DNA of 64,000 nucleotides. Source: Penicillus capitatus. Its lineage: Eukaryota; Plantae; Chlorophyta. Position numbers and translations under genes: made by a program. Each line of letters opens with the position of its first letter. Positions within the stretch are counted from its first letter, which is position 1. Below, piece by piece: positions 13,175 through 46,918 of this stretch. The stretch spans positions 496,001 through 560,000 of the forward strand of contig OZ287697.1 in NCBI GenBank assembly GCA_965649825.1, written 5' to 3'. The notes beneath the pieces were generated by a model. It saw only the letters and a list, made by a program, of their open reading frames with translations, searched no databases and was not told the DNA's origin.

Positions 13175-13581
13175 TGACGGGTGACATTTGCCGCCTGCCA
13201 GGAGACACAGGAGCAGAACTTCGAAAAAGAAAGGCAACGGATCGAGAGCGGAGAGCCGCTCGAGGATGCCGAATCGGATCAGCCCGCCGTCAAATCGACC
13301 ATCCACGTGGCGGACAAGGAGACAGCGTCCGGTCTAGAAGGTGGGAAACGCAGGGACCCTCAGCCCCGTGATCGTAAGAGAATGCGTTCTAGACGATGAG
13401 GACATGGCCTTTCAGCCGGTCAGTGAACTGAACGACGAAATCCAGCAGGAAAGAGGAGGCCAGAATCCGTCCGACGACCGAGCGTCGCCTCCGGCCAAGA
13501 AGGCAAAGTACAGATTCCCTTGCCGCCAGTGCTCGATCGAGCCGTGATGTGTCTAGGCTCAACGACGAGGACGAAAAGTAA
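13175..13581 (+). pseudogene. Orphan duplicate of the pinin 3' exons
   Basis: ETQEQNFEKERQRIESGEPLEDAESDQPAVK...AKKAK is near-identical to the pinin C-terminus at 46512-46900, but no pinin 5' exons lie upstream. Homology starts inside a pinin intron. Confidence 0.75.
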
Positions 13582-16500
13582 GCACCGAAAGGGGCCACCC
13601 GGTGTGGGGACCGAGAAGGACTGCTTAGCGCACCTTCCCCTTTCTCACTCTTCTCTGCTGTTTTAGGAGGAGCTCGGAGGTAGAGGAGCAGAGGGAGTCG
13701 TCATCGTGATGCGATTCTCCTTAGCAACGAGGGAAGACGAAGAGAACGTTCTTTCTTAGAGAGCGAGCATGTTTGACAAGGAGATAGTCTCGTGGCACTG
13801 TTTAACAGCCAGAATGGATCCAAAAGAATGAAAGAACGCTTTCCCGAACAAATGAACAGAGTGACTCAAAATCTGAAAAGGCCTCACGAGGTGCGACTGT
13901 CATGTTGGAAGGAGTCATACATGTCTCGTTCAAACGGCGCGTGCATCTGCACCGTTCCCGTTGTCGAATCACCCTTCCAAGGGATGTCCGTTCTCTCTGA
14001 ATCGTGTGAATGACCTACAGCTGATTCAGCCATTGGATCTGATTCTTGATTCCAAGCTTCGACTTGGTGTTCGTCGTTCTGCTTTGCCCAGGAAGTTGTC
14101 ATAACCACTTCTCCCTTCTCGGTTGCATAAAAAACGTCAGATCGATTCTCTGGCTCTTGATAACTGCTGCTGGAAGTTCCCTGTACGACTTTGATTCTTT
14201 CTGTCCGAGATCCTCCTGTCAGACTGTGGACAGAAGAACCGTTGCCATGGTTATCGATCGACAGACTTGTCATTTCGTTCTCATTATTCATCTCATTCGA
14301 ACTGCTCGATCCATTCTCCACCCTTCCATTGCAGATATCTTTTCCGAACTGATGGCGTCCATGAATACTACCACTCATTGTCTCCTCATCACTGACCCCA
14401 GAAATAGAGCATCCTATTCTGGACTCATAGAACTGTACAGCTTGTTCTTCTAGATCCATCTGTTCTTTTCTCTTGAGGCTTTCCAAAATCTCTCTTTCGC
14501 TTGGACAAGGCAAGTCTCTTTTTCTGTAATAGAGTAGATAGGCATCCTGACTCACAACAGAATGTGCATCAATGGCCGTAACCCAGCTGTCATTGAACTT
14601 GTGCCATTTACCACCTGGAGATTTCACACAGCTGGTGTAGTGTCCCACTTTCGGTCCATCGCCCAAATGATGGCAAACACCATACAGGTCATAGATGGGA
14701 TTGTCCTCCAGCTGAGGTGCATAGTACTCACTTAGGTCCAAACCTTCGAGGGGAAACTCCACCAATTGTTTCAACTTGATCAGACGATCGAGGGCCTCGC
14801 AATAGTCAAAACGTTTCAGTCCGATCAACAAAATGTCGGGCGTTTTCCAGAGACGCATAGATTTGATGCCGTTGACCATTTTCTTGCACCCACCACACTT
14901 CCATAAATTGTCACCGTCCAGAGCACGGGGATGCGGCTTGAAATCGTGAGTCAAGCAATCATGAAGTGTGCAGCTCTCCAGCATCTTGCGACGTCTCTCT
15001 TCAACGCCTTCGGCGGTTTTGTCCAACAGCGGCTGCTCCAGTGTTCGGAGATTGTAGTGCTGTTCTGCATTGGTATCCCAATCAATGACAATGGTCCGTG
15101 CTTCGTCTGCCCGTGGCGTGTCGTTGGATTCGCACAAACTATAAGCTTCGGATGCTGCAGACGCAGCATTGAGTGGTAAGGAACGACTCGAGCTACAACT
15201 AGCCCCGAAGCCTGTATGATTCGATGCCAGCATCGTTGTTTCACGGGGACCGTCATTCACCCCTTCAAACAAATCGCCTATATACGGATCGAAGTCTTTG
15301 TGATCATCTTCTTCTGCTTCTTCCTCAACAGTCGACGAGGCTGGTAGAGGTCCAACTTGGGCCGAGCTTCCACCAGATCGCAGTGTTGCCATTTCCATTT
15401 CCATCGGTTTTCTTTGCTGACTTGGTTCCGCCATCTCCGTGTCGTTTTGTACCGCGCTGTGATCCTCGGGTGGCTCCTTCGCGTCAGGAACTGCTTCGTC
15501 GTGATAAGCGTCTTCCCCAACCTGATCGTTCGCAAACTCTTTCGGATCGAGGCTGTCCACTCTGTCACTGGAGGTGGATCCGTGGGCAGACACTGAAGAC
15601 GTTGCTTGTCCAGGCATCTGATCATTTCCAGATTCCTCACATTCCATGGCATCATGCTCGGTGGACAAGTACAGAGACTCTCGTTTGTGGTCTTTCTGTT
15701 CCTCTCCTTCTTGCAGGGCAGCCATATGTGGACGCTTGAAGGGACGTAAAGAGTTCTCCAAGATATCTAGAACACATCCGTTTCGTGTAAATATCCAAAG
15801 CAAATGGCAGGCAGGCCAGGTGACACACCTAGGTTACCTTGGAATGTGCGCTTCTTTGTGGAGAATGACCAATCGTCTGCGTCGTCGTGAGGTAGCCACA
15901 GGACAAGAGGATATCCAAATTCCCGTTTCTCCTCGTGACGTGGGTGAAGAGAGTAGCAGCAAGAGGTGTAGTACGGAACGTGGAAATTCTTCTGGTGAAT
16001 GAAGCACGTCTTCTGGCCACCAGATGTCGGCCCATACTCACATCCTGTGTAGGAATAGAGCAACAACTTGTCGTGCACACTAAACAACCAAGCATGTGAG
16101 GGCACAAAGCTCATCGGCACGTATGTTGTCATACTTTATACGCTCCAGCGGGTCTGAAGGTTGAAGAAAAACCAGCTTTCTTCTGTTCAATACGAAGCAG
16201 AGATGCTCCCAAGGCCTGTCTTCCCTGCAATCGATCAGTTTTGCCGCTTCGTGATAGAGGTCTTCCACCGAGATGTTTGAAGATAACTCCAAAGCATACT
16301 TCTTTGGTGGCTGATTCCCACAGACTTCGATCAGTGTAAAGACGATGATGCGCATGCTTGGAGGGGGCAGACCCACTTGCAGCACTGTGAAAGAATCAAA
16401 CCTGCGCGATTTGAAGTCGCAGTTTGGACACTCTGTCAGAATACGATACTGTCCGTGAAACTTGTCCGTTATAAAAGAATTCGACCGGTCCCTGAATCGC

Positions 16501-17430
16501 ACACATTCTCACTCAAACCAACGGTCATCCGAAGACTCACGCGTGATAGGTCCAACATTCATCAGCCATCTCTATATCAGATTTGCTGGCATCTTCCTTA
16601 ATCTGTTAACAGGGTAAGAGAAAGGAGAGTAGAGGGATAGATGACCTCTTTGTAATAAGGTTTTGGTATCGTTGCTTTGTTACAGTCTTCCATCAGTCCA
16701 TCTAGTACCGTCTCTGCCAATTCCGCCGTATCATGCTGATCTTTTTCAGCAAAGAGTTCGTAGTACTCAGACAGCACCATCCAAAACGAGTATGGATTCG
16801 TCTGGTCTTGATCGGTCTAACAGCCACACCCTTATGACTGTCCGTCGCCGCCTGTCTTACCAGCCAGATGTTGCGCATGAGTTGGTAGAAAGCGTCTGCA
16901 AATTTTCCCGCACAACCGTCTGGATTTCTCTTGGCGATATCGTTCTTGTATTTCTCCGTGAGAAAGTAGTGCATCAACTCAGGCGTATGCAACAGACATT
17001 GCAGACTCGAATTCATATAGCAGGTGTTTCCAATATTCATCAGTCCCACCTTGCCAGAATGCCTCCCCAGTCCACTCTACAGATGCACACCTAATCAGCC
17101 TCACAACAGCTGATGGACATCGACGACGACGGACATAAGGAATGAGACAGAATACAGCACGGTTCTCAATTTGCAATTCGGCAAGCGTTCTCTGGTCGCG
17201 TGCCACATAAGACATTCTCCCAACGGGATCGAACAGGTACGGAGTGGAACGCTGAAATGGCAGATCTCGATAAACACGTTGCAGCACTTCATCCATGGTC
17301 GTCTGCATTCCAAAAAGTCCTTTGACTGCTGCTTACGTAAAGATCCGTCATACCGTTATCGGGAAGAGGTGTTTGGTGATGGTGTTCTTGTTAGCGTAGC
17401 GCCGTCGACTGTAGACTTGCAGTTCAATGG
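13175..17430. repeat. Left arm of a large inverted duplication (partner 43140-46918)
   Basis: 13175-13930 is highly similar to the reverse complement of 46918-46170. USP exons and introns align through to about 17430/43140. Confidence 0.92.
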
Positions 17431-17893
17431 TCGCAGCTTCGGGCTCTTCGTTCGAAACCCCATACCAACGCTCAAGGCGTTCCCATACAGCCCGACAGAT
17501 CGGTTTACAGTCGCCATCGTCATCCTCGTCCTCACTCCACCGTTCGACGGGTCCTGGATGCTGAGGTGTCTCGGACGTCATATCCTCTGTGTCAATGTGG
17601 TCGTCGACATCGTCGTGTTCGAGGAAGCCGACGTAGCGAGTCCACTTCACCCACCAACTAAACAGCGCCTGTTGCTGGAAAAGGAAAAGCGACAGAGCGA
17701 CGCACCTCTTGCGAACGTAGCATTGTTCGCTGTCAGTTTTGTCCATGTTTTGAAGGAGTTCGTGAATTTCTCTGGCTTCATTGTCGCGCCGAACGGTCGA
17801 CGTCGTGACGCTGCTCTCGGCAGACGTTGAAGAAAAACCGCGACGCCCACGCGTCGACCCTAGGTGCGAGGATTGCTCAGGACTGTGCACCAT
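13884..17893 (-). CDS. Ubiquitin carboxyl-terminal hydrolase, USP4/11/15-like (plant UBP5/8/9/10/11 group), with DUSP domain
   Basis: DUSP (WWVKWTRYV...PGPVE...AVWERLERWYG), Cys box GLMNIGNTCYMNSSLQCL, QHD, CPNC and CGGC zinc knuckles, His box YDLYGVCHHLG...GHYTS...WHKFNDS. Confidence 0.93.
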
Positions 17894-18098
17894 CCTTGAG
17901 AGAAAGACAGCGAAAGGCAACGCGCGTAATCGAAGTGGGACGCAAAATTCCAAGCGGATACGATGCGACAGACACGAGACGTCCCATCATTCCCGACCCA
18001 CCACTAGACAACATGACGGCCCATCATCAAAATGTCCCCAATCTCCTGCTCCCCAACATGTATCTCGTCTAGAGATATAAAAAGAGTGAGAAACGGCA

Positions 18099-18787
18099 TT
18101 ATGCAGTGAGAAATGGATGACTCTTGAAGAGTGTGACAAGAGAGCTGAGATCCGATGTCGCATCATAGGACAGCGCTTTCCAGATCTCGCACTTGATGCG
18201 CATCTCCTGCCGAAACTTGGATCTGCTAGTCAAGGAATAAGACTGCTCAATGTGGAGAACGGTGTTTGGTGCACCTGACAGTGACCAAACCATTATGCCG
18301 GTGCAACAGAACAGTCATCGGGATCTTTGCGTTTTCAGATGCCTGAACGCATCTCTCCAACTGTTGTACGGTATCATGAAAGATCTTCCTGTCACATCAT
18401 ACATTGTCCACAGAGGAGGAAAGCCACTTCTAACTCAGTACATGCAATCACGAAACAATCCAAAGAGCATCTCACATTTCTTGGTTTGACAGGCAGTGAG
18501 CGTCTCTTTGTCGATCACGACAGCACGAACCTGTGCCTTTTGCACCGTCTAAAAGTAGAGGTCCTGTCACGTCAACATCGAGACTTGTTCAGACCTCCAA
18601 TCCGTCGACGTTCCGCAGCACGTCATCGAGAATTCGGCATGCTTCGGACTAGATCCAAAGACGGACACGATTCCGTCGCTTCTTCACAGCTTCCCACCTG
18701 AGTCTCACGCCACTGCAGCACAGCGTCCGACGCCCTGTCGTAGAGTCTTTGCATTCGAGAGTAGATGTTCGTCATGTTGGCGATCAT
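18099..18787 (-). CDS. Uncharacterised protein of about 165 aa (weak resemblance to the C1orf109/AIRIM family)
   Basis: Four GT-AG introns (46-53 nt) join five exons in frame: MIANMTNIYSRMQRLYDRASDAVLQWRETQ/SEACRILDDVLRNVDGLE/TVQKAQ...DCM/KIFHDTVQQLERC...VTVS/RSKFRQEMRIKCEIWKALSYDATSDLSSLVTLFKSHPFLTA*. The family call is a guess. Confidence 0.65.
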
Positions 18788-19194
18788 GAGCGATCCAACA
18801 GATCACCTACGTCACGACACCCGTCAAATGTCACGTCGCCAGACAGCCACGTCGACCGTTCGCCTTCTTTTTTCGTCCAGAGAACACAAGGCCTCGATTC
18901 ACCAAGGCGTTTCACCCGTCGCTCTAGTCTGACGAATCCGAAGCTCATCTGATGGATAGTCTGATCGGCCAGGAGTTCCGTTATGCGTTGGAGTCTCGCC
19001 TTCCACACGATTTGAGCACCGTCCGTCTGCAAAGAGGTACTCCAACGGTTCGCCCTTTGTCGCGTCGCGTCGGCGGTTTCGTCTGCTTTCCCTACTTGTT
19101 CAGCGGTGCGGGACCACTTCGTGCGTTTCTCACATTGCTTTTCACTCAGCGCACGCGTGTTCGTTTGTTCGTGACATCAGTTTGAGAGGAGACC

Positions 19195-20391
19195 ATGTTT
19201 TCGACCGGCGCAGCAACTGGACCTAATCTCTATGCGGCTTTTCCTTCAGGTGCCGGAGGCAATGTCTTGCCACCAATGCGTCGTCTGGACTACACGCATG
19301 ACGTTCCCCCTCTGGGCTGCAACCCTGACGCCATGAAACTGTTTGTGGGGAACATTCCGAAGACATATACAGCTGATAGCCTCCGCCCTCTCTTCGAGGC
19401 CATTGGCACCGTCGTGGAACTAGTGGTGGTGCGTGACAAATTGACGGACGAGTCGAAGGGAAGTGCGTTTGTTTGGTATCAAACACGTGCCGAGGCGGAA
19501 CGAGCTATCGCTGAATTACACCTACGCCGCGTCTTGCAGGATCCGACGGGGGAACAAGATCGTCCCCTCGTCGTGCGACGAGCAAATCCCAAGGTGGCCC
19601 CCGTCCTCATGTCATCTCCTATCATGCCGAGTCCGCCGGCATACCAATCCATGGCGGATACGGATTTGCCTGCGCATCTGCAAGGTGCTTCTTTCTTTCA
19701 ACCGCCGCGAACCAGCATAGATGCGGCAGCGCATCTCAGTCAGCATAGCAATGCAGCATCCCAAGTCAGTCAAATGCAAATGATGCAAGACCAGTTCGGG
19801 TCATTGGGCTTAAACACGACACCCCTCTCTGCACCTGGGACAACATTACCAGATACAGAGCAACTTTTGAGCAGAATCGCAGCTAAGAATGCCAATTTCG
19901 GTCAGTTTTTGGATCAGACGAGTCATTGTTCACTGCTGGGACAGACGACACCACCAGCAGGTATGCCAATCACTCTGCCACAAGACATGCTTATGAACAT
20001 GCTCGCTGTGTGCTGTTTAGTGTTCCCATCTCTCTCTAGTGGTCATCCAAGTGCTCCAAGGGGTAATGATTTGTCGACCATTCTTCATTCCACATTAAAT
20101 CAGACTCTTCAACAAACCGGGGGAAACGCTGCTGCCACAACGAATAGCAATGGTACTGGTGGAAACATGGGGTTTGGCCAAATGACGCTGGCACTTCATG
20201 TGAGCCGAGCCCACGTCGCACTGGTGGCCACCAATTTACACACCATCCAAGGGAACACAGGAGCAATGGTTCAACTGACGCCCGGTTCTGGTGATGGATA
20301 CGTGTTACTTCTTTCTGGCAATGACTCAAACCTGGATGCGGCCAAGACGCTGGTGCACGAGCTCGTAGCACAGTCTCCCCCCTCTGTTTGA
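19195..20391 (+). CDS. RNA-binding protein: CELF/FCA-like RRM plus a C-terminal KH-like segment, intronless
   Basis: RNP2 KLFVGNIP, RNP1 KGSAFVWY, RPLVVRRA. C-terminal LHTIQGNTGAMVQL...LLLSGNDSNLDAAKTLV is KH-like. Confidence 0.85.
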   Translation: MFSTGAATGPNLYAAFPSGAGGNVLPPMRRLDYTHDVPPLGCNPDAMKLFVGNIPKTYTADSLRPLFEAIGTVVELVVVRDKLTDESKGSAFVWYQTRAEAERAIAELHLRRVLQDPTGEQDRPLVVRRANPKVAPVLMSSPIMPSPPAYQSMADTDLPAHLQGASFFQPPRTSIDAAAHLSQHSNAASQVSQMQMMQDQFGSLGLNTTPLSAPGTTLPDTEQLLSRIAAKNANFGQFLDQTSHCSLLGQTTPPAGMPITLPQDMLMNMLAVCCLVFPSLSSGHPSAPRGNDLSTILHSTLNQTLQQTGGNAAATTNSNGTGGNMGFGQMTLALHVSRAHVALVATNLHTIQGNTGAMVQLTPGSGDGYVLLLSGNDSNLDAAKTLVHELVAQSPPSV

Positions 20392-21191
20392 TTGCTGATT
20401 CCTTTGTCCACAGAAATCTTTTCTATCTTGTCGTTCGTTCGTTCGTTCGTTTGTTCGTTCTTCCTTGTTGTTGTTGTGACTGGCAGTCCACTCTCCTTAC
20501 ATTAGATGATCCTTATGTGCTCATGCATGTCTTATTTTCTAGCGTGCTATCATATGTCCATGTTTTTTGTTCTTCCCTGTGGCTGTGTTGTCGCTGTACT
20601 TTTATCCCTGCGATAAAGAAGCACTGGTGGTGTGTTTCTCTGATCTGGGTAGGTGAATGCCAATAATCACATAGAGAATCGGTTGACGGCTCTCGCCTAC
20701 CAACTTGTCTAATAACCAAGTCTTGACAGTAAGTGAGTGAGTGGGCTTCCGAAAGAACTGCTTTCGTCCTCTTGATTCTTGTATGGTGAAAATGAACCAA
20801 CCCACTCTATACCGACACTCCGTGGCATGATGGTTTCACCAATATCTTATATCGCCTTTGTGATGCTGGCCACGGATCAGTAAGGAGGAGTTGTCACACG
20901 AGAGCCAACTCCTCTGGAGTTCGTTTTTTCACTACACGGTGTAAATGTGTCGAGACATCTGAACGGCATTATCAGATGGGGATTAGAAAAAATATTCCAT
21001 GCAAATGAGTGCAGCAGAACATTTCAGTACTCACCTCATTGTGTCATGGATGATGTTATGTTTGTGCATCCTTCGAAGATACGAATAACTTTTGTGTGTG
21101 GACATGTGCGTTTGGCGTTTTTCTGGAATAGATCGATTGGTTGGTCTCTTCGAAACCTCATGTGTGCGTTCATGTGCAAGATCTGTGGATG

Positions 21192-24100
21192 TTACTGAAA
21201 AAGCTGGTAGACATTCTTCAAGTGTGGCATCACAGACTGAACATGTTGGAAAGCAGTGTGATTTATCTGACCGGCATAGAGCGCGTCGTAAAACATCTTC
21301 AAAAAACACAGGCGATCGCTGTGGGGAATACTCCCATGATCATCTCCTCCTTCCAAACACAGAACAGCTGAGGCGCCCGATCGGAGAAAACTCTGAACGA
21401 GATCATCCGACAGATGTCGCGTCGAACTGATCACGGCACTCTTGATGAGCGCGTGAAGACTGGGAATGTCGCGCGGTCTCACGATCTCATCCGGATCTGA
21501 TCTCGCAAAGAGATGCAGAGATGCAGGTACAGGATAGTGAAATTCCTGTTGTGCCATCCACTGACAGTAACCGTCACCATAACGGAACAATGCCCGATGC
21601 TTTAGCGCTTCGGCCAGAGAAATGTCTTCCTCCACCCCAAGGTTCGATTTTAGCGTCGCCGCTTCGGGACCTGATGGCAAAGATGCCTGTGGTGCTCGAA
21701 CAATAGTATTGGGGCGTACTTGGATCGATGACCGACCAGAGCTTCGTAGACCATCGGAGGATGAGTTGACTGTTGTCTTTTGTTGTCTCCATGTCCAGGT
21801 GCACAGCTCCCATCTGTCCTGCAATTCTATTTGAAACTGCCTGCAAAAACGCCTTCCCTGTAGAACAGCAACATTCCCACTCTGTATCGCAAACACACAA
21901 ATGGAGGACCTTGTACAGCTGGAGCAGCAGCGAGAGAGGAGAGACGGAAATCTTTACAACAGGCCTCGTGAGATAAGACGTGCCCTTGGTGCACATCGAC
22001 TGTCCCTGCACTGTAGTCCAAGAAATGTAGTGGATGGCACGTCTGCTCTTCATCTCCTGATTCTCTGAGTGCCCTCACGATCACCAGTGGACGTTGCTCT
22101 CTCCATAAGGAACCGTTGGAAATGGGCGCTATGGTCTGATAGGTGTCTTTTCGAGCCATCAGAATTTCTGCAGCTTTGGCAAAGAGGGATGCATTTTTCT
22201 CGATGTAATCCATCGTAGCCGCTTCCAAGCTGCTCCATTTCTCGGCATCCAAGTCATCCAAGGCCAAATCGCATCGCTTGTCCACAGGATTGAAACGAAA
22301 GTAATTCATTTCTGGCAGCATCGTTGTCATCAGAGACATCGCCTCGTGCGTGCGTTCAACGCTGCAGGAGCTCTCTATCAATACACTGCCATTCTCGATG
22401 AAAGAGGCACTCGATTTCTCCCGTTGAGCCGCAGGAACCGCCCCCAGACCGACAGAGATCACACAGTCAATGTCCTTCTCTGGCCACAGAAGCTTCGCCT
22501 GTTGGACAGCCAATGCTGTTGGATTGTTCGCTGTGGTCGCACCATCCTGAAAATGCAGACCGTCTAATTTGAAATCCTCAAAGAAATATGGCGCCGCCGA
22601 TGAGGCACGGACGCCTTGCCAGAGATGAAACTTTGAGCTTCCCAGCGACGAATCGGCTCGCATCTTTGCCGATGTCTTCTCGACAGAGAATTCATAATTC
22701 CGAAACAGAAACGGCATGGCTGGGATGATGCTGGTCAGCGTAGAGGCGGCAAAGACCTTTGGCCCTCCCAGCACAGCTGAGTCAATATAGAGAGGCCCCG
22801 TTGCCTTTTCTTCTAAGGAACGGCACATCTCTTGCAGCAACAGCTCAAACGTCGACGCATCGTGTTTGCAACCAGCCATCACAACACGCAGTCCTTGTTG
22901 GCCACTTCTGTACATACGGATTAAACTGTCCTTCCATCCAGTCTGCTCCTCCTGGTGCGCCTGATTGAAGACACGGTGGCCCAGTTTCTTATAGATCTCA
23001 TCGCATTGCTGCAGAGAGTACTTCAGAATGCCGAGCGATACAGCCAACATGGCGCCGGATGAGGTACCGCCGATGAGATCAAAAAGATCCCAGATACGAC
23101 GGCCCGTTCTGTTTTCCAGTTCTTGCAACATCTTCACCGCGGCGAGTCCTTTCATACCACCTCCATCGATTGCCAGAATCCGAATGCCTCGATTCTCTCG
23201 AGGCGGTCTGCCAAGAATAGCATCGACGGCATCGTGTTCGCCCAAGACAGACAGACAACGACAGGCCAAGAGACGACTGCGCCGATCGACACTGGGAGAG
23301 TTGCTGCTGGCCAGATCCTTGAGTGAGGTCTTCACATCTGTTACGGAAAGCAACACATGTCTATTCTCCATAGCGAAGGCGAGATTGCCCAGCGTCTCGA
23401 GAGCGCGATGCCGGACGCTTGTCTTGATAGAAGGGTCGATGAAGGATCGCAGCTTCTTCACGAGTGCCGGAGTGAGCAGCGTCACGGCAATCCCATCAGA
23501 CGTCATCGCCAATACGGACAGAGCCTTGAGTGCATAGGTCTTCGTTTCCGGCCTATCCGATTCCAAGACGGTCAGCAGCGCGTCCAAGATGCCGTTCCTG
23601 ACCAGCGTTTCCGCCGTGGAGACAGAATGGACGATCAGCCCTATCACTCTTGCCGTCTGTTCCTGTACGACGCTCTGAGGACTGAGCACCATGAGAATGA
23701 GTTGCTGCAGCGGAGCACCCGGCTGTTCCAGAATCGCATCACAGTTGATTCGGAACTCAGCCAATCGACCAAGAGCGCCAACCATGAGTGGATGCTGACT
23801 GGAGCTGCGACTGAAGAGAACAGAGAAGAGTGGATTGAGCTTTGTACCGCAGGCCAATGCCGTTGTCCCTTCAATCGTCACTTCAAACTGTGAGTAGGAG
23901 CTGTCCGACCACACACGCAGATTCATAAGCGACAGCGACCGCAGCTCGTGGCAGACAGAGAGCTCCGGAATGTACTTCAGCGGATTTCCATACAGCTGAA
24001 GCGAATGCAGTTTGGGAAACTTTCGCAGATCCAAGACCACCGTCGAGATGCAATTGAACTCCAAATTGAGATCTTGAAGATGACAGCAATCACACAAATC

Positions 24101-24778: not shown

Positions 24779-24871
24779 GTTTTGGAGATGACGTTGCGTT
24801 TCCGCAGCTGAACATCGTTTTCGCAGCTTTTCCCATTGGAGGCGATTCCGAGCCCAGTGATCCTTCCATTC

Positions 24872-25504: not shown

Positions 25505-25592
25505 GCCATATATAATCAAAATCCCTTTCCCCCTCACTCAGGAATTATTTGCACATTGAGACAACATCTGTTGTGTAAAGGTCTGCCTGTCT

Positions 25593-25877: not shown

Positions 25878-25937
25878 TGTTAAACAAAATGCGTCGAATG
25901 AATAGACGGACGGTCTGCTAAACAATCGATAAGATAT

Positions 25938-30143: not shown

Positions 30144-30328
30144 GAAGCCAAAACGGGCGATTTTGCACCTTATGCTGGTGTCGACATGACGCGCTGAATG
30201 GCATTGCGGTTAATGGTCCTGATGACGAGCCAAGGGTGATGACTTCTCGCAGCGGCATCTCTTCCACGCGTTATAAACGTCACTCGGCCGACAGTGACGC
30301 TCTTCTGACAAAAAGACTACGTTTTACG

Positions 30329-33287: not shown

Positions 33288-33381
33288 TCGGGTCGATCCC
33301 CACAGTCGAGAAGACGCCGTCGCCAACTTATGCGCACCCCTGACGACTCTCCCGAGCACTTCCTGACGACTTTGCGGCCGT

Positions 33382-35807: not shown

Positions 35808-36235
35808 ACCGACGCGTTTCTCAAAAAAAAAAAAAACGCATCGTAGGTTGAGAATCGTACGGAGCTGAGGGAATAACCTGCAGCACGTGCAGCGGAAAGT
35901 CTCTGCATCGAATTGGATTGGATGTGCATTGGTTAAACATGTGCGCCGTGTTCAATCGTTCAAATCGTTTTCTTATCGTTAGAACGTCACCATCTGCTCA
36001 AGAAGACTAAGTCCTGCGCTCAAATCATGTTAAGTGAATCGCCAATGCTTCAAAAAAATCGAAGCATTTTTGGCTTCGATCATCGTTTGTATACGGACCA
36101 GAGGGAATTCCACTCGGCTGAGATGTGTTTGTTTTAGTGCCAGAACTGAAGAATACACGCAATCGTCCATCGAAACGGAGCCGTCAGTTGGGATTGCGGA
36201 TTTAGGGCGTGAAATGTGCGAAATGCGAGCCCCGT

Positions 36236-38004: not shown

Positions 38005-38456
38005 TTGGTTTCCAAAGGTCGATTTTTTTTTTCTAGTCTCCGCTGTAGATCAAAGATGATTTATTCTTTAAAGTATTCTTTGCTTGTATGTTCTTGTTTC
38101 TGCTTCACACAGTGAGCAAATCGGATTGGATACGGTGTGGCGCAGCCGAGGCCGCGAAGGCCCTGGCATGTAGACCACGACTTTAAGCTCTTCGGCAAAG
38201 GCGTGACAATCCGAGTGTTTTCCAATCAATACTCCGAAAAGGAGACAGCAGCGAAGAGAAAAAGTAAGAATGTAGAATAGGAGCCAATGCAAATGACTAG
38301 TGTCTTATTTACAAGAAATTTGTAAACACAAAACAGAGTCCGACTGTTTTGGCTAGTTCTGCTTATCGCATCGCGTAACGTCGGACAAGTTCGGACGGAA
38401 ACGAAAGCAGTTTTTACAGCCCTGTTTTTAGAATGCAAAAAGAATGAAAGGGAAAG

Positions 38457-38872
38457 AGGACAAAAGTTTTTGTCCGGGTGGTGATGACCCTATCGTCGGC
38501 CCCCGAACTCAGCGCGACGTTGTCCTTTCCCCGCCGTAACCCATCCAACTCGGCGCGGGCTCGCCAGACTCAACCGGGTCAACTCTGATGGGACACCCTC
38601 CTCTGAGTCCGGCGCAGGAATCGAACCCCCGCGGTCGTACTTCTCGAACTGGTCCAACTGCACCATCCGCATTCGGGTCGATCCCCACAGTCGAGAAGAC
38701 GCCGTCACCAACTTATGCGCACCCCTGACGACTCTCCCGAGCACTTCCTGACGACTTTGCGGCCGTCCACCGTGTGCCCGTGACGACTTCACCGACGACT
38801 ACCTGAAGACTCTCCCGACCACTTCCTGACGACTTTGTCCACAGGTCCACCGTGTGCCCATGACGACTTCTG
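38457..38872. repeat. Host repeat copy 2 (uninterrupted; carries the empty TRIM target site)
   Basis: Reads ...GACTTTGCGG-CCGT-CCACCGTGTG... continuously, where copy 1 has CCGT-[TRIM]-CCGT. Confidence 0.95.
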
Positions 38873-39239
38873 ATGATTTTTGAGAAACGCAATTTCTCCT
38901 TCGTCAGTTTTGAACGATACTCTCGCAACTTTTTGGAAGCCTTGCTTAACCGAAACAGGACAACTGCTGAACTTTCTCTGTGCAAAGTGAAACTCTGCTA
39001 GTCTTTTGATATTCGATATGCAAATTTGTTATGCATCAAATTCGAGACTTAAATCTGAGGAACTCAAACGGAGACCTTCGATTGTAGTACCACTGCGCGC
39101 ATTTTAGATTTTTCTTTCGATCTCGTTATGTAAAAGAATACAGCAAAGTTTGTTTCACTTCGGTTCTTGAACAATCCAATCCTTTGGAACTGGGGCGTTT
39201 AAGTTCATTGTGAATCACCCTTCGACGCTCAGGGCTCTT

Positions 39240-40730
39240 ATGATGTACATGGAAAATGTTCTGGAGTGGTTGAAGCTGAATGTACAACTTCCCGACAGCC
39301 TTTCAGGCAGCGAAGACGGATCGTTGTAGAAGCTGGATGTCTGCGTCGAGGCATTCAAATCCTGAAGAAGTTAAAAAAGGCTGGCATCGTGTCGAGAACT
39401 TTACAGAGAAATCCTGCGATCTGCTTGGAAAGAAGAATGCCAAGCGGTTGTTTTTCCTAATCGATGCTTTTGTGGATGTTGAAATCGTACTGGGTTTGAT
39501 TGAGACAGACAGAGAAGGCATGTTCAGTTGAAGTGGACGGATACACGCGGTTCTAGAAATGGCCGGAGGGCGAGACATCACGCGGCGAATATTGACAGGT
39601 GCATTGAACCTTACACGATTCTGAAGAGAAGCGATGTTTATCTCAGACACCAAGTGATTTCTTGCTAATGGGTACAAAACAGATGAAGCGTTCGAAATCC
39701 TTATCTACGAGATCGAAGCATGCCAATGAAAAGACGAGGTGAAAGAGAGACATCCGTGGATATGGGAAAAGGAGATGATTACTCTCATCAGAGAATGCAT
39801 CAAATGGTCACTTAACACAGTGATCATCCGCACGATCTTAACAACAGGAAAAGCATAGTACCATTAGAGACGAAGGGACTTGCAATGGGATACAGTCTTG
39901 GTCCCTGCGCTGCATGTGTGACTCCGTAGGCATTGTATGAGAAACCGGCAAAGAAGCACTTTATGAGAGCATGTGGATACATGGACGTTATATAGATGTT
40001 GTGATACTCATCACACGCCAGGAAAGTACTCTTAATTGGAAAGAAGAAGTGGCTGTATGGCTGAAGGTCACATATACCGACAGATTGGAGACCATCAAAC
40101 TCACAGCGACCCATGGAATGAACTCCGACAGCGTGCCTTTCCTCTTTCTAGATATAGAAACGGACATTTAGAAACGGACATTGAAGGGAGCATCAGCAAC
40201 AAGGTAGATACATCTTGTTTTAGTAAACCACCAGTACGTTTTAGTATATCGAGCAATCCAGAATACATCCGTTCAAGATGTTTAAGGCCATTGTGCAACA
40301 AGAAACCAGATGCATGATAGGCGACAACATTAAGAATGAAAATGTTGTTTAAACTGCTGAAAGAAGAGGCAATTCGTTACATCAGAAGAGACTACCATGT
40401 TAAAGAATTGTGGCAATAGATACATTATGCAGTGAAAACAAATGCAAAAGGGAAGGTTTGTCAGAAGCAACGCAAGGGATTACGACAGTTTGAAAGAAGA
40501 TAGCTGGAGCGTCGCAGAAAGCCCTTTGATCAGAGCAGTCGGATATGAAGATCCCGTCAAACACATTCAACAAAAAAACCAACAAGATTAAAAACCGGGA
40601 TCAGTTTCTGCCGTTAAGAATACATTTTTCTCATCAACTACGAGCCTGGAGCCCGGAAACAAGTTGCACGAAGCACACGAAGTAGCTTGTAGAAACTTGT
40701 CAATCAGTAGAAATCTTGATCAATAGCAAA
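39240..40730 (+). mobile_element. Decayed Penelope-like retroelement (PLE) reverse transcriptase
   Basis: Frameshifted motifs in the expected order: FISDTK*F...DEAFEIL, LIRECIKWSLN, TKGLAMGYSLGP (39876), RYIDVV (about 39986), SVPFLFLDI, IHPFKMFKAIVQQE, VACRNL. Many stops and frameshifts. Confidence 0.75.
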
Positions 40731-43007
40731 CTGACAGGCTTTAAGTGGTGATCTTTATTTTGAGTTAGAGTGGTTTCGAGCTCGCCAAACTAACTACTTT
40801 TGGAGGTAGACCTTGAATCGGGTTATTCAAATCTTCCGATCGATGTTAATTTGCAACCTGTTCGTTTTTCACACATGAGAAGACCTATACCTGCGAGATC
40901 TTGCCTCAGGGCTGGCCAGGCTCTACAGGACTTTTTGACAGTGGAATGAGCGACATGTTCGTGATCTTGATGTAGTGTCGTACATAGACATTTGATTGTC
41001 GGGGAGGCGAGATCCGCCATATTGCTTTCTCCATACGGATAAACCGTCGTTCTGTTGTAGCGGACCCGGTCATCGCACACGAGGAGAATGCTAGAACGTC
41101 AAACCAAGCACCCTAGTTACTCCACGCTGAATAAACCATGTAGGCATTTTCATTGAATGCACGCTCGTTCAACAAGAGTAGTAAAGCTTTAAAAGACATT
41201 CATTTACAGATACTCTCCCATTTCCCACTAGGAATTATCCCAACTTTCAAGACGCATGTACTAGGAGGCGACGAACGTTTGTTTAAAGGAGGAGTTTGTT
41301 TGGTCAATCGCCTCCAATATCCTCCTGGTCCGGCGGAACGACTATGCGAGCGCGATCGATTGCCACAGAGTCCAACATGAAAACGTCATGAACGGTAAAC
41401 TGGTATCAGTTACAATATGATTCCGAAAGGAAGCAGGTCAGCGCCAACACCGTTCAAGGCATGTCAAGTTTATGAACGCTCTTGCCTGATCTGTGATCTA
41501 CGGACTGACGACTTGTTGTTTAGAAGCGAGGACGTGTACAGTAAGTAGGTGGATTGCAGTGGTAGATAAAAGTAGTTGGAACTTGTTTGTGATTCCATGT
41601 GCGATGAGACCTCAGACATACATAAAGCAGCATCGTTTCCTTGCTACACAGACCTGTTAAGTCGAAATAAAGCGCGTTAAGTTTTATCAGAGTGCTCTGC
41701 ATTAAAACACCGCAAGTACAGTGCCGTCATCGAAAAGCGGTAGCTTTAGTAGAGTCGAAAGCTAAAGCTTCCTTGTTTAAAGCGCGAGTTAGATGAACAG
41801 GAGAGAGAGAGTAGTGAAGTTGCTAACAGGACAGAAGAAGATAATAGTAACACTAGCATCGAGGACAGTACTTTTAAGCAGTGTGCTGTCGACGGATCGA
41901 TGATTTGCTGAAGGCGAATGCGTCAGGCACACACGAACTGTTGAAACATTGCGCAGAATAAAGCACATTCCAAAAATCGTTGTTCCTTAACCAGGTAGAC
42001 GGCCAACGTCGTTTTCTAGCTGCCATAGATTCTCGACTGTCGTCGACGAAGGCACTGCATGCTTTTAACCACCTTTTCCTGAGTGGCAGAGCAACCTCGA
42101 GTACCTAAAGCACTCATTATCCCACGTGGACCAGAATGGCCGTTTTCAGATATCGGCGATAAACAAGTCATACAAGTGCGTGACTGGTCACCACTGAGCG
42201 AACACATGTTATTTATTGTTCAGAAATCTCGATCTGCGCGTCGTCTTACTGCATGCAGATTATGATTAATCACCGCAACTGTCACAGACTGCACACTCTT
42301 CACACCTTGCAAAATTCGCACGAGCGGAAAAGTAGCCTAGCCGATGATGATTCGTCGGTTGCTCTGATCTCTTCACATGGTGCTTGCTTCCCATTTCCTA
42401 AAGTACGGACTTTCAATCTTCGAAGGGCTTTTTGCTAAAGTCTCATGGACAGCAATGATCGTCAATCAATAGGTGTGGTATTCGTGTATGTTACCTGTTG
42501 AGAATGACAGCTGCTCTGCAAACGACAGACGGATGATGGAGTTGCATCTCTTACTCTTCGTCACACTGAAGCATTGGGCGGAGGTGCAGTGAAACAGACT
42601 GAGTGATGAGGTCGAGCTGAGTTCGATCCGAAACGCGTGTCAACTCCCAAAGTTTCCAATATCTAATGCGTCCTTTGTTGGGAATTCTCTTCGGTCGAAG
42701 TCGGAAATGAGGTGATGATGCGTGAAGAGACATGCATCTTACAGATGCGAATGGTTATTCCTCAATCGCTGTCAGCTCCCTCACTCAAAATCACGGCAAC
42801 GTTTTGTCGACTGCTCGGTGCGACAACGAAGCCGAAGAATTTAAAGAACGGACAGAAACGGAAAAGACAGGACCGACAGTGAGCCGCGGTACCTGTTTTG
42901 GCAGACGTGCTATGTGGTTGTTAGGCTTCTTTCGTGGAAAGACTCGTCGTATACCTGTCGTTAGCGATTGAACTAACTCCTAAGGCGGTTCCATTGACCT
43001 AGGCGAC

Positions 43008-46000
43008 ATGAGCTCAGAGGCGATACCAAATGCAGAACCCCGCGAACAGCCGCTAGGGGGAAATGCTAGTGAAACGGTTAACGTCGATTTGTCCGAACAC
43101 TCTGACAATCCGCACGAAGCCCCTAACTCTTCCGACACTCTTGCGATGATCGAACTACACTTGTACAGGCGACATGACCATGACTATGAGAACGAAACGA
43201 CGCTCTGCTGCCCTAAATCAGTATAGACAGATCTTTAAGTGAGAGATCGTCGAGAAACTCTGTTTGTGGATTTCAGATCACCATGAATGATATACTGCAG
43301 ACCGCTATGGATGACATAATGCAATATATTCCGTGCGAGATTGATCACTACATTTTCGATCCTGTTGGGAAAAGGGTCTTCCGGGAACAAGACCAAAGAA
43401 CGCTCGGCGAATTGCAGATCGAGAACAATGCTGTATTCTTTCTCATTCCTATCAAGGTTCGTTGGCGTCCATCAGCTGTTGCGAGACAGATAAGGTGTGA
43501 ACGGTAGACAAAGAGCGGGGAATATTCTGGCAGAGTGGGACTAAATAACATCGGAAACACATGCTACATGAATGCGAGTCTGCAGTGTTTGCTGCACTCG
43601 CCGGAGTTGATGCATTACTTCCTCACTGAGAAATACAAAGAAGAAACTTTAGAAGACGACTTAGATGAAGATGCGTTGAGACTCGTAGATGCTTTCTGCG
43701 ATCTCATGCAAAACGTCTGGCTGGTAAGACGGACGGCGAAGGACAGTCATGAGGGTGTGATTGCCAGACGAACCAGAGAACATATCATCCTGAGTATTTT
43801 TGGCATGAACTTAAAGCGTACAATGAGGAATTTGACAACCACTATCAGCATGATACAACAGAATTGGCCGAGACAGTGCTGGAGGGCCTGATGGAAGGCT
43901 GCAAGAGAGCCACGATGTTTGAAGCCTGCTCTTCGGAGGTTGTGCCATCCTTGTGTTCTGCTGTTTTTTATTTCTTTAGCAGGTGAAGAATGACAGCGAA
44001 ACGTCCGACGAACAGATGGCCGCCGAGTGTTGGAGACAACACAGGTGAGGAAATGAGTTGTTGATCTGAGCGAGAATCTGTGCGATTCAGGAATAGGTCG
44101 AATTCCTTCATAATGGACAAGTTTCATGGGCAATATTGTGTGCTGACACAGTGTCCAGACTGTCCCTTCAAATCGAGTATGTTTTGTTCTTTCGCTGTGC
44201 TCCACGTAGGCATTCCCCCTCCCAGTGTGCGCACCATCGTCTTTACGCTGATCGAAGTCTGTGGGAATCAGCCGCCAAAGAAGTATACCTTGGAGTTATC
44301 TTCAAACATATCGGTGGAAGACCTCTATCACGAAGCAGCGAAGCTCATTGATTGCAGGGAAGACAGGCCTTGGGAGCATCTCTGCTTCGTCCTAAAACGA
44401 GAGGAATTCATATTTCTTCAGCTTTCGGATGTGCTGGAGCGTATAAGGTACAGCAGGATAAGTACAGACGCGTTTTGTGCCCACAGATGCCTGGTTGTTT
44501 AGTGTGCACGACAAGTTGTTGCTATATTCCTACACAGGATGTGAGTATGGGCCAGCATCAGGCGGCCAGAAGACGTGTTTCATACATATGAAGGATTTTT
44601 ATGTTCCATACTACAACTCCCACCACTCCACTCTTTGCTACCGGGAGAAACGGGAATTTGGATATCCTCTTGTCCTGTGGCTACCTCACGACGACACAGA
44701 CGATTGGTCATTCTCCACAAAGAAGCGCACATTCCAAGGTAACCTAGGTGTGTCACCTGGCCTGCCTGCCATTTGCTTTGGATATTTACACGAAACGGAT
44801 GTGTTCTAGATATCTTGGAGAACTCTTTACGTCCCTTCAAGCGTCCACATATGGCTGCTCTGCAAGAAGGAGAGGAACAGAAAGACCACAAACGAGAGTC
44901 TCTGTACTTGTCCATCGAGCAGGATGCCATGGAATGTGAGGAATCTGGAAATGATCAGATGCCTGGACAAGCAACGTCTTCAGTGTCTGCCCACGGCTCC
45001 ACCTCCAACGACCGAATGGATGGCATTGGTAGAAATAATTCTATGAACGATCAGGTCGGGGAAGGCTCTCATCGCGAAGAATCAGTTGCCTCTACGAGAT
45101 TCAAACTTTACGATTTGTGCGATATCGACCGCACCGATGAGAGAGGCGAGACAAAGACCGTTCTCGTCGATTGGACTACAAATGCAGAACAGCATTACAA
45201 TCTCGAAGCACTGAGGCAGTCATTGAACAAAACAGCCAAAGGCATTAAAAATCGCAAAATGCTGAAGTGCTGTGCACTCTATGCTTGCTTGAATCACGAA
45301 TTCGATCCTCATGGTTGCGCTCCTGACGCAGACAGTTTATGGAATTGTCGTGGGTGCAACGAGAAGGTTAATGCAACCACTTCTTTGCGTCTCTGGAGAC
45401 TGCCTGATACACTGTTGATTGGACTGAAACGCTTTACGTACTGTCCAGTGAGCAGACGCTTGATTAAGACGTGTCAGTGGGTGAAATTTCCTCTCGAAGG
45501 TTTGGATTTGAGTAAATATTGTACATCCAAGGAAGGAGATGATCCTATTTACGACCTGTATGGTGTCTGTTATAATTCCGGAAGCACTCCTGAGTCAGGA
45601 CACTGCACAAGCAGTGTGAAATGTCATGATGGAAAATGGCGTTCTTTTAATGATAGCTGGGTGAAGGTTATTGATGAAGGAGACGTTGTCGCTGACGGAG
45701 CATGTCTGCTCTTCTACAGAAAGAGAAACTTGCAGAGTCCAAGCCAAAGAGAGATTTTGGAGCTCATGTTGCGAGACTTGAAACAAGAAGAACAAGCTGT
45801 TAAGTATTGCGATTCTATATTGAAGGCTGCAACACCCTCTGGAGACGCTATTGACGAGACTATACGCAGAGACGTTCATGAAAGCCATCAACTTGACGGT
45901 CACGGCAGTCATGAATACTTTAGAGAGCAAAGATATGAATCAGTGGAGGCAGGAAACGTGCATAGATCTGACGTTTTTTATGCAACCGAGAAGGGAGAAG

Positions 46001-46209
46001 TGGTTATGACAACTTCCTGGGCAAAGCAGAACGACGAACACCAAGTCAATGCTTGGTATCAAGAGTCAGATCCAATGCTTGAATCAGCTGTCGGCCTTTC
46101 ACTCGATTCAGAGAGAACGGGCATCCCGGCAACGGATACGGTGCAGATGCATGCGCCGTTTGAACGAGACATGTATGACTCCTTCCAACATGACAGTCGC
46201 ACCTCGTGA
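43008..46209 (+). CDS. USP paralog lacking the DUSP domain, strongly diverged
   Basis: GLNNIGNTCYMNASLQCL, QHD, CPDC and CRGC, YDLYGVCYNSG...GHCTS...WRSFNDS. Same intron positions as 13884-17893. The exons checked are in frame. Confidence 0.85.
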
Positions 46210-46918
46210 GGCCTTTTCAGATTTTGAGTCACTCTGTTCATTTGTTCGGGAAAGCGTTCTTTCATTCTTTTGGATCCATTCTGGCTGTTAAACAGTGCCA
46301 CGAGACTATCTCCTTTGTCAAACATGCTCGCTCTCTAAGAAAGAACGTTCTCTTCGTCCTCCCTCGCTGCTAACGAGACTCGCATCACGATGACGACTCC
46401 CTCTGCTCCTCTGCCTCCGAGCTCCTCCTAAACAGCAGAGAAGAGTGAAAAAGGGAAAGGTGCGCTGAGCAGTCCTTCTCGGTTCCCCCACCGGGTGGCC
46501 CCTTTCGGTGCTTACTTTTCGTCCTCGTCGTTGAGCCTAGACACATCACGGCTCGATCGAGCACCGGCAGCAAGGGAATCTGTACTTTGCCTTCTTGGCC
46601 GGAGGCGACGCTCGGTCGTCGGACGGATTCTGGCCTCCTATCTCCTGCTGGATTTCGTCGTTCAGTTCACTGACCGGCTGAAAGGCCATGTCCTCATCGT
46701 CTAGAACGCATTCTCTTACGATCACGGGGCTGAGGGTCCCTGCGTTTCCCACCTTCTAGACCGGACGCTGCCTCCTTGTCCGCCACGTGGATGGTCGATT
46801 TGACGGCGGGCTGATCCGATTCGGCATCCTCGAGCGGCTCTCCGCTCTCGATCCGTTGCCTTTCTTTTTCGAAGTTCTGCTCCTGTGTCTCCTGACAGGC
46901 GGCAAATGTCACCCATCA
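43140..46918. repeat. Right arm of the inverted duplication (partner 13175-17430)
   Basis: Reverse-complement alignment. Homology ends at 46918, inside a pinin intron. Confidence 0.92.

What the first reader, a model, noticed from the sequence alone, without database searches (positions are those of the whole stretch)
13175..46918. About 4-kb inverted duplication with reciprocal gene truncations: footprint of a 30-kb inversion with staggered breaks
Left: pinin 3' fragment plus a complete USP with DUSP. Right: complete pinin plus a USP without DUSP. The duplicated block (pinin 3' + intergenic + USP minus its 5' end) is in opposite orientation at the two sites. This is the geometry expected if an ancestral convergent pinin-USP pair was cut at two staggered positions and the segment 13175-43140 was inverted, duplicating the overhang. 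Such inversion-associated duplications are known in Drosophila. Here one appears to have produced a new USP gene. An inverted duplicative transposition is the alternative.
Basis: partly seen in the sequence, partly recalled or inferred. Interest (0 to 1): 0.7.

Follow-up and report, generated by a model that had tools for sequence, protein, structure and literature searches.

The report
Old tandem gene duplicate, later inverted
Two copies of a deubiquitinase gene face each other across about 25 kb in this green-alga contig, but a sister genome and an outgroup show that the gene was first duplicated in tandem and only later flipped by an inversion, which is ordinary genome evolution that happens to be well documented.

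Summary
The inverted duplication is real. The arms are 13171-17239 and 46922-43349, with weak colinear homology reaching 17801 and 42806. The arms are not of one age. Two patches are 95-99% identical, and the rest is 55-82% identical (dS about 1.0-1.3).

USP-R was not cut by a breakpoint. It keeps decayed remnants of the DUSP-coding exons, and it has an intact 902-aa UBL-UCH reading frame with all shared splice sites conserved.

An outgroup contig carries a single USP in the order patatin, RRM, USP, pinin, TGT.

A sister genome (dS about 0.45) already has both copies. They are orthologous one-to-one with the window's copies, lie in direct (tandem) orientation about 9.5 kb apart, and are colinear with the outgroup. 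The L copy there also carries a pinin 3' fragment.

The duplication is therefore older than the inversion and was most likely tandem. In the window's lineage, a block of about 20-31 kb holding USP-L, RRM, patatin, the mitochondrial carrier and WDR26 was later inverted.

The 3' patch is about 97% identical within each species and about 87% identical between species. This shows independent gene conversion in both lineages.

So the inversion is supported, but the staggered-break origin of the duplication and the "new gene" claim are not.

The parts
13171..17801 (.). Left arm (L) of the inverted duplication: pinin 3' fragment, 3' UTR region and almost the whole USP-L gene
   Evidence: Searches give BLAST and MAFFT identity. 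Searches give weak colinear matches up to 17801. Beyond 17801 no homology is detectable.
42806..46922 (.). Right arm (R) of the inverted duplication
   Evidence: The outer edge at 46922 lies inside a putative 52-nt pinin intron, 46943-46892.
13171..13547 (+). Pinin 3' fragment next to USP-L: half an intron, the penultimate exon, an intron and the last exon. There are no upstream pinin exons.
   Evidence: It is 97-100% identical to 46922-46546. No further pinin remnant was found elsewhere.
13884..17893 (-). USP-L: intact 9-exon gene of 1199 aa with a weak DUSP, a UBL-like region and a UCH domain. Introns are 43-62 nt.
   Evidence: Between the window and the sister, dN/dS is 0.02. Its closest relatives are eukprot g256.t1, a Logan USP and the Bryopsis USP.
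42732..43145 (+). Decayed remnant of USP exons 1-2 (the former DUSP region) upstream of USP-R. It has two in-frame stops at about 42969-42983 and no DUSP match.
43146..46209 (+). USP-R: intact 8-exon, 902-aa reading frame with UBL-like and UCH regions and no DUSP. All seven shared introns keep GT-AG, and the Cys, QHD and His boxes are kept.
   Evidence: Between the window and the sister, dN/dS is 0.38. R-specific residues are shared by both species.
46546..47478 (-). Complete pinin gene, convergent with USP-R and divergent from the TGT gene
   Evidence: The homologue eukprot g3905.t1 is 60% identical.
13171..14146 (.). Young gene-conversion patch, paired with 45962-46922. It covers the USP C-terminal tail, both 3' UTRs and the pinin 3' end.
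   Evidence: Over 565 shared columns, the window's L and R copies are 96.8% identical and the sister's are 97.3% identical, against 86.7-87.3% between species.
15600..15932 (.). Youngest gene-conversion patch, paired with 44644-44975. It includes a 62-nt intron that is 100% identical and a disordered acidic coding stretch.
   Evidence: 4-fold sites identical at 34 of 35. The sister's two copies are only about 80% identical here, so this patch is specific to the window.
13397..33244 (.). Block colinear with the sister genome but in the opposite orientation relative to the USP-R, pinin and TGT side. It holds USP-L, RRM (19195-20391, +), LRR-Arm-patatin (about 21718-24997, -), mitochondrial carrier (25941-27066, -) and WDR26 (30146-32212, +).
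   Evidence: Searches give the alignment to the sister composite. Searches give the Pfam matches. Searches give the gene order in the outgroup and the sister.
33245..42473 (.). Window-specific stretch between the inverted block and USP-R. It holds a GST gene, photolyase-like ORFs, 320-bp direct repeats and an ORF-poor 3 kb. It has no counterpart in the 40.6 kb of sister sequence available.
42474..42805 (+). USP-R upstream region still colinear with the sister. Colinearity ends at 42474, so this is a rearrangement breakpoint about 260 nt upstream of the remnant start codon.
11224..11725 (.). Conserved non-coding element Q. In the sister it lies in the spacer between the L-copy pinin fragment and USP-R.
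   Evidence: No Rfam or tRNA match.
10403..10621 (.). Anchor P. In the sister its homologue lies about 450 nt beyond the WDR26-side end of the block.
   Evidence: 70-72% identity, E 1e-20 to 1e-27.

Best explanation
The ancestor had the order mitochondrial carrier, patatin, RRM, USP, pinin, TGT, with a single USP convergent with pinin. After the split from the Logan outgroup and before the split of the window species from its sister, a unit was duplicated in tandem. The unit ran from about 260 nt or more upstream of USP to a point inside the 3' part of pinin. This left a pinin 3' fragment behind the upstream copy (USP-L).

The copies then diverged unequally. USP-L stayed under strong constraint. 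The pinin-adjacent copy (USP-R) let its DUSP exons decay and evolved about 17 times faster at non-synonymous sites, yet kept its UBL-UCH frame, splice sites and catalytic boxes.

Later, in the window's lineage only, a block holding USP-L with its pinin fragment, RRM, patatin, the carrier and WDR26 was inverted. The block is at least 13171-33244 and probably about 10.7/11.2 kb to 42473. This turned direct repeats into inverted repeats about 25 kb apart.

Interlocus gene conversion has repeatedly re-homogenised patches in both species.

Shown: the order and orientation in three genomes, the one-to-one orthology, the relative ages, and within-species identity above between-species identity in the 3' patch. 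Inferred: that the copies were tandem at birth, that the window is the derived state, the mechanism of the inversion, and that USP-R is expressed.
For: - Outgroup L004 has patatin(+), RRM(-), one USP(+), pinin(-), TGT(+), with no internal repeats.
- The sister loci L002 and L005 overlap exactly by 2007 nt, giving a 40,648-nt composite. Its order is TGT, pinin, USP-R, a 5.2-kb spacer, the pinin fragment, USP-L, RRM, patatin, carrier, WDR26. All of this is colinear with the outgroup.
- The two sister copies are direct repeats: 10644-11214 vs 20122-20692 at 97.4%, and 12381-14104 vs 22216-23958 at 80.5%.
- Window against sister: the R side aligns in one orientation and window 13397-33244 aligns in the other.
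- NJ tree on regions without recent conversion patches: winL+sisL 100%, winR+sisR 99.7%.
- His-box region, 211 codons: dS between L and R is 1.0-1.3. Orthologue dS is 0.45 and 0.48. Every comparison with the outgroup is saturated. dN/dS is 0.02 for L and 0.38 for R.
- DUSP exon remnants sit upstream of USP-R.
- Mosaic identity and identical introns.
- The 3' patch groups by species, not by copy.
Against: - Polarity rests on parsimony. A staggered inversion-duplication in the common ancestor followed by a re-inversion in the sister also needs only two events.
- The rearrangement is not a clean two-break inversion. Element Q keeps the orientation of the non-inverted flanks.
- The window's 33245-42473 and the sister's 5.2-kb spacer have no counterpart in the other genome. 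A clean tandem junction is therefore seen in neither genome.
- The edge of the pinin fragment differs between the species: 46922-equivalent in the window and 46696-equivalent in the sister.
- In the protein tree the R clade falls outside all L-type sequences (76% bootstrap). I attribute this to long-branch attraction, because synonymous distances to the outgroup are saturated.
- All three genomes are single metagenome or SRA assemblies, and no reads were available.
Confidence: 0.72

Rival explanations
1. One inversion with staggered breaks in the common ancestor of the window and its sister created the two copies already inverted (window-like). The sister lineage later re-inverted nearly the same segment, restoring colinearity with the outgroup and placing the copies in direct orientation.
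For: - Within the window alone the geometry fits. One arm continues into the rest of pinin, and the other continues into the RRM and patatin context.
- It needs the same number of events as the tandem model.
- Inverted duplications at inversion ends are documented in Drosophila (PMC1885836, found).
Against: - It needs both breakpoints to be re-used in the sister, so that the outgroup order is restored exactly.
- Homologous exchange between the inverted arms cannot produce the sister's direct repeats.
- USP-R carries the DUSP exons, so the proposed break inside USP did not happen.
- The near-identity that suggested a single recent event comes from later gene conversion.
Confidence: 0.1
2. Assembly artefact. 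The inverted orientation in the window, or the direct orientation in the sister, is a mis-join or mis-orientation in a metagenome assembly.
For: - Both contigs come from single metagenome assemblies.
- A second sister contig (L003, 99.5% identical to L002) ends inside the 3' repeat patch. The repeat therefore does disturb assembly.
Against: - The arms are about 80% identical overall, with at most 205 identical bases in a row in the window.
- The points where colinearity breaks (13397/13171, about 33244 and 42474) do not lie between two near-identical repeats.
- The sister's two independently fetched loci overlap perfectly.
- The contigs are 1.46 Mb and 4.08 Mb long, at 41x and 180x coverage by their names.
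Confidence: 0.05
3. Inverted duplicative transposition. A copy of pinin-3' plus USP was pasted in inverted orientation about 25 kb away.
For: Two inverted copies with one sharp outer edge.
Against: - The copy that lacks the rest of pinin (L) is the one that keeps the ancestral RRM and patatin neighbours.
- The sister has the copies in tandem.
- The neighbouring genes are inverted together with USP-L.
Confidence: 0.03

Closest known systems
Inverted duplications at inversion breakpoints from staggered breaks (Drosophila; Ranz et al. 2007, PMC1885836)
   Same: Inverted copies of a few kb sit at or near the two ends of an inverted segment, with a truncated gene fragment at one end.
   Different: The relative without the inversion already has both copies. 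The copies are more than twice as old as the species split. One arm lies inside and the other outside the rearranged block. The duplication was therefore not made by the inversion.
Tandem segmental duplication with asymmetric divergence of the daughter genes
   Same: There is a single copy in the outgroup at the same site and two direct copies in the sister. A fragment of the downstream neighbour (pinin) sits behind the upstream copy. One copy is conserved (dN/dS 0.02) and the other is fast-evolving with domain loss (dN/dS 0.38).
   Different: No clean unit-to-unit junction survives. The sister has a 5.2-kb spacer, and the window has the inversion.
Concerted evolution of paralogues by interlocus gene conversion
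   Same: There are sharp-edged patches of 97-100% identity, including an intron and non-coding DNA, in arms that are otherwise diverged. Within the 3' patch the copies group by species.
   Different: Only about 1.3 kb of about 4.5 kb is homogenised. In each species the patch runs right up to that species' own outer edge of homology, which is unusual for tracts that need homology on both sides.
USP4/USP11/USP15-type deubiquitinases (DUSP-UBL-UCH)
   Same: USP-L has a weak DUSP-like N-terminus, a UBL-like region and a split UCH domain with a long acidic insert. USP-R keeps the UBL-like and UCH parts.
   Different: The DUSP of USP-L is below Pfam's threshold. USP-R has none. No biochemical data exist.

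Membership tests
Staggered-break inversion-associated duplication | Inverted copies of the same sequence at the two ends of the inverted segment | tested here: inconclusive
   Within the window the arms bracket 17.8-42.8 kb. The block that differs from the sister includes the L arm and possibly 2 kb to its left, and it stops 330 nt short of the R arm.
Staggered-break inversion-associated duplication | Relatives with the standard (non-inverted) arrangement carry only one copy | tested here: not met
   The sister genome has the standard orientation and both copies. Only the more distant outgroup has a single copy.
Staggered-break inversion-associated duplication | The duplication and the inversion are the same age | tested here: not met
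   dS between L and R is 1.0-1.3, while the arrangement differs between species separated by dS of about 0.45. One-to-one orthology of the copies is supported at 100% and 99.7%.
Tandem segmental duplication | Single copy at the same site in an outgroup | tested here: met
   L004 has patatin, RRM, USP, pinin, TGT, with no internal repeat.
Tandem segmental duplication | Two adjacent copies in direct orientation within the ancestral gene order | tested here: met
   Met in the sister composite: direct repeats 9.5 kb apart, colinear with the outgroup. Not met in the window itself.
Tandem segmental duplication | A head-to-tail junction joining the end of the unit to its start | tested here: inconclusive
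   A pinin fragment follows USP-L in both species. A 5.2-kb spacer in the sister and a rearrangement in the window separate it from USP-R. No homology between the regions upstream of L and R is detectable.
Interlocus gene conversion (concerted evolution) | Paralogues within a species are more alike than orthologues between species over the tract | tested here: met
   3' tract: 96.8% and 97.3% within species, against 86.7-87.3% between species.
Interlocus gene conversion (concerted evolution) | Non-random clustering of identity, including silent and non-coding sites | tested here: met
   The longest perfect run is 205 nt against a null maximum of 55. 4-fold sites are 97% identical in 15600-15932 and 57-58% identical in the old exons. 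One intron is 62/62 identical.
USP (peptidase C19) deubiquitinase | UCH domain with Cys box, QHD motif and His box | tested here: met
   Pfam UCH E-values are 1.5e-29 (L) and 1e-26 (R). The motifs are conserved in both copies of both species.
DUSP-UBL USP subfamily (USP4/11/15-like) | N-terminal DUSP domain | tested here: inconclusive
   USP-L scores 17.4 bits against a cutoff of 29.3, although several relatives carry PF06337. USP-R, including its hypothetical N-terminal extension, has no match at E <= 1.
Pinin | Pinin_SDK_memA conserved region | tested here: met
   The two exons score 34.0 and 33.2 bits against a cutoff of 25. The gene is 60% identical to eukprot g3905.t1.

The most novel reading that the evidence does not exclude
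The two arms may still interact physically, as the recent conversion patches suggest. Now that they are inverted, they could drive recurrent flip-flop inversion of the 25 kb between them, giving a structural polymorphism in natural populations of this uncultured alga. In either case USP-R would be a deubiquitinase without a DUSP domain that evolves rapidly under its own selection, rather than a decaying copy.
Probability: 0.12. Interest if true: 0.5.

Novelty: new member of a known kind. Interest (0 to 1): 0.3.

Why it matters
It matters mainly as a worked caution. An inverted repeat pair with reciprocal-looking gene fragments in one genome looks like the signature of a staggered-break inversion. 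Two related genomes show a different history: an older tandem duplication, a later inversion, and patches refreshed by gene conversion.

It also gives three usable results:
- a dated example of direct repeats becoming inverted repeats;
- gene conversion acting independently in two sister species on the same 3' tract;
- a strongly asymmetric paralogue pair, with dN/dS of 0.02 against 0.38 and domain loss in the faster copy.

None of this is unexpected to a specialist in genome evolution.

Tried and rejected
- Homology beyond L 17801 / R 42806 (start codon, 5' UTR, promoter): global alignments were no better than shuffles. The true inner edge stays unknown.
- More pinin sequence at the other junction or in the sister spacer: none found.
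- An 11-nt match (GGAGACACAGG) left of the sister's fragment edge hinted at an internal deletion. MAFFT gave no convincing homology, so I dropped it.
- Synteny with Bryopsis (L001): only USP and patatin are shared, and their order differs from all three closer genomes. It is too rearranged to set polarity.
- The first protein tree placed USP-R basal to all L-type sequences. I rejected this as evidence of an ancient split, because 4-fold and synonymous distances to the outgroup are saturated while L-R distances are not.
- The codon tiles were contaminated by tblastn reading through the tiny introns. Those dN/dS values involving winL are discarded in favour of the single-exon His-box analysis.
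- The NG86 "saturated" dS values overstate divergence. 4-fold sites give K4 of about 0.5-0.9.
- Transposon-like content at the breakpoints: no suggestive ORFs in 38.8-43.1 kb. No inverted repeats around element Q.
- Element Q as an RNA gene: no Rfam or tRNA hit.
- The "SPOC" label: no Pfam, PDB or sister homologue.
Full report
**1. The observation**

A self-comparison of the window finds one large inverted repeat pair. The segments are 13171-14146 vs 46922-45962 (94.8%), 14482-15096 vs 45761-45156 (70.5%), and 15489-17239 vs 45087-43349 (79.1%). A global alignment shows a mosaic:
- 94-100% identity at 13171-14146;
- 98-99% at about 15600-15932;
- 55-82% elsewhere, with two stretches (about 14150-14480 and 15100-15490) that are absent or cannot be aligned in the right arm.

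The longest run of perfect identity is 205 nt. The maximum in 1000 shuffles of the mismatch positions is 55 nt.

**2. The genes**

The sequence is eukaryotic, with tiny GT-AG introns of 41-62 nt.
- On the minus strand I could assemble an intact 9-exon USP of 1199 aa, USP-L, at 17893-13884.
- On the plus strand there is an intact 8-exon, 902-aa reading frame, USP-R, at 43146-46209. All seven shared splice sites are in the homologous positions.
- Both copies have a strong UCH match. USP-L has only a weak DUSP match (17.4 bits, cutoff 29.3). USP-R has none.
- The right arm ends inside a complete pinin gene (47478-46546, minus strand). The outer edge of homology at 46922 falls inside a putative 52-nt pinin intron.
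- The left arm therefore carries only the last two pinin exons (13171 to about 13547).

**3. USP-R was not truncated by a break**

Upstream of the reported inner edge there are colinear weak matches into USP exons 1 and 2:
- L 17215-17239, 17279-17307, 17542-17597 and 17758-17801 match R 43373-43349, 43324-43296, 43047-42992 and 42849-42806. The last of these has 80% identity and E 2e-6.
- At the protein level, L residues 32-157 align to R 42807-43202, with two in-frame stops.

The duplication therefore covered at least all but the first 92 nt of the coding sequence, and the DUSP region of USP-R decayed in place. Beyond 17801/42806 nothing is detectable.

**4. Ages within the window**
- 4-fold degenerate sites are 57-58% identical in the Cys-box and His-box exons. 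They are 97% identical in 15600-15932 and 91% in the C-terminal tail.
- One intron is 62/62 identical.
- The identical coding patch includes a disordered acidic stretch that is not conserved among orthologues. Selection therefore cannot explain the identity.

This is the pattern of an old duplication with later gene-conversion patches.

**5. Related genomes**

Best hits place the window in a siphonous (Bryopsis-like) green-alga lineage. It comes from ENA metagenome assembly ERZ25074695, contig ctg340516.

Three comparisons were possible.

(a) Outgroup. A Logan contig, whose patatin protein is 66% identical to the window's, has the order mitochondrial carrier(+), LRR-patatin(+), RRM(-), one USP(+), pinin(-), TGT(+). 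It has no internal repeat.

(b) Sister genome. This is ENA ERZ26696514, contig ctg303836.
- Two loci overlap perfectly, giving 40,648 nt.
- The order is SH2, TGT, pinin, USP-R, a 5.2-kb spacer, a pinin fragment, USP-L, RRM, patatin, carrier, S6PP, WDR26. All of it is colinear with the outgroup.
- The two USP copies are direct repeats: 10644-11214 vs 20122-20692 at 97.4%, and 12381-14104 vs 22216-23958 at 80.5%.

(c) A EukProt species. Patatin is g254, one USP is g256, pinin is g3905 and a second USP is g3906. Its two USPs are each other's closest relatives. This suggests a parallel duplication or gene conversion in that species. No contigs were available to check.

**6. The inversion**
- The sister aligns to window 57372-42474 in one orientation (88% in the flank, 73% across USP-R).
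- It aligns to window 13397-32691, and on to 33244, in the other orientation (85-90%).
- The block with USP-L, RRM, patatin, the carrier and WDR26 is therefore inverted in the window relative to the USP-R, pinin and TGT side. The sister and the outgroup agree with each other.

**7. Order of events**
- An NJ tree on regions without recent conversion patches pairs winL with sisL (100%) and winR with sisR (99.7%).
- In 211 codons of the His-box region, which lies within a single exon, dS is 0.45 for the L orthologues and 0.48 for the R orthologues. It is 1.0-1.3 between L and R and saturated against the outgroup.
- The order is therefore: outgroup split, then duplication, then species split, then the change of orientation.

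Because the genome without the inversion already has both copies, in tandem, the duplication was not produced by staggered breaks of this inversion.

A formally equal-length alternative exists: a staggered inversion-duplication in the common ancestor, followed by a re-inversion in the sister. It requires both breakpoints to be re-used, and I rate it at about 0.1.

**8. Selection**
- dN/dS between the species is 0.02 for USP-L and 0.38 for USP-R.
- Both R orthologues keep the Cys, QHD and His boxes and share many R-specific residues.
- USP-R is thus an old, fast-evolving paralogue that is probably still constrained. It is neither a new gene nor an obvious pseudogene.

**9. Gene conversion in both lineages**
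- Over the 565 columns of the 3' tract shared by all four copies, identity is 96.8% within the window and 97.3% within the sister. It is 86.7-87.3% between species.
- The 15600-15932 patch is specific to the window.

**10. What remains unresolved**
- The rearrangement is not a clean two-break inversion. A conserved non-coding element Q (window 11224-11725) lies in the sister's spacer, between the pinin fragment and USP-R. One inversion with breaks left of Q and at 42474 explains the order of all anchors but not the orientation of Q. A break at 13171 explains its orientation but not its position.
- The window's 33245-42473 and the sister's spacer have no counterpart in the sequence I could reach.
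- The pinin fragment ends at different points in the two species, at 46922-equivalent and 46696-equivalent. In each species high identity runs right up to its own edge.
  - Either the ancestral fragment was at least as long as the window's and the sister lost 226 nt, or a conversion tract in the window ran past the old edge.
- No reads were available, so an assembly artefact and present-day polymorphism could not be tested. The diverged arms and the positions of the breaks make an artefact unlikely.

**11. Verdict**

The inversion and the ancestral pinin-USP pair are supported. The proposed mechanism (duplication by staggered breaks) and the "new USP gene" are not. This is a well-resolved but ordinary case of tandem duplication, inversion and gene conversion.

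Noticed in passing
window 33062-33381 and 38447-38766 (also 33382-33513 = 34063-34194): Two 320-bp direct repeats, 98.75% identical, flank a 5.4-kb segment holding a GST gene (35046-35932, -) and photolyase-like ORFs. A 132-bp repeat is 100% identical. The sister has a single copy of the repeat unit (composite 39833-39968) and none of the interior, so this looks like an insertion or duplication specific to the window.
   Followed up: partly
window 1-542 and 28777-29320; sister composite 35297-35776: A dispersed repeat, 89.7% identical between its two copies in the window. It is present at the orthologous position of the second copy in the sister. The family is unknown.
   Followed up: no
window 4541-7476: A tandemly repeated region with units of 129-144 nt and two larger copies of about 1.7 kb. 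It encodes Kazal-type protease-inhibitor domains (ORF 6481-7176, -).
   Followed up: no
window USP introns, e.g. 16860-16817 vs 43724-43767: The tiny introns of the two paralogues are 75-84% identical, while 4-fold sites in the flanking old exons are only about 57% identical. This suggests strong sequence constraint on 41-62-nt introns in this genome, or very small conversion patches.
   Followed up: partly
window 42732-43220: The decayed DUSP region upstream of USP-R is an open frame from an ATG at 42732, apart from two stops 15 nt apart (about 42969-42983). A 39-nt GT-AG interval would remove both stops in frame. USP-R may therefore have a longer, highly diverged N-terminus.
   Followed up: partly
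L003 (sister sample, contig ctg287459, 45.6 kb): A second contig, 99.5% identical to the sister locus, ends at position 10855. This is inside the 97%-identical 3' repeat patch. It is either a second haplotype or strain, or an assembly break caused by the repeat.
   Followed up: partly
EukProt proteins g254/g256 and g3905/g3906 (P0089, P0001, P0084, P0002): In another species, one USP sits two genes from patatin and a second USP sits next to pinin. The two USPs are each other's closest relatives. This could be a parallel duplication of the same gene at the same site, or concerted evolution.
   Followed up: partly
window 11224-11725; L002 15907-16192: A non-coding element of about 230 nt has long conserved blocks between the two species (about 70% identity overall). 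It has no Rfam or tRNA match, and its position and orientation do not fit a simple inversion.
   Followed up: partly
window 11050-11108: A perfect 15-nt tandem repeat (CTGCGACCTTGCGAA, 3.9 copies).
   Followed up: no
The ORF has no Pfam, PDB or sister homologue and may not be a gene.
   Followed up: yes
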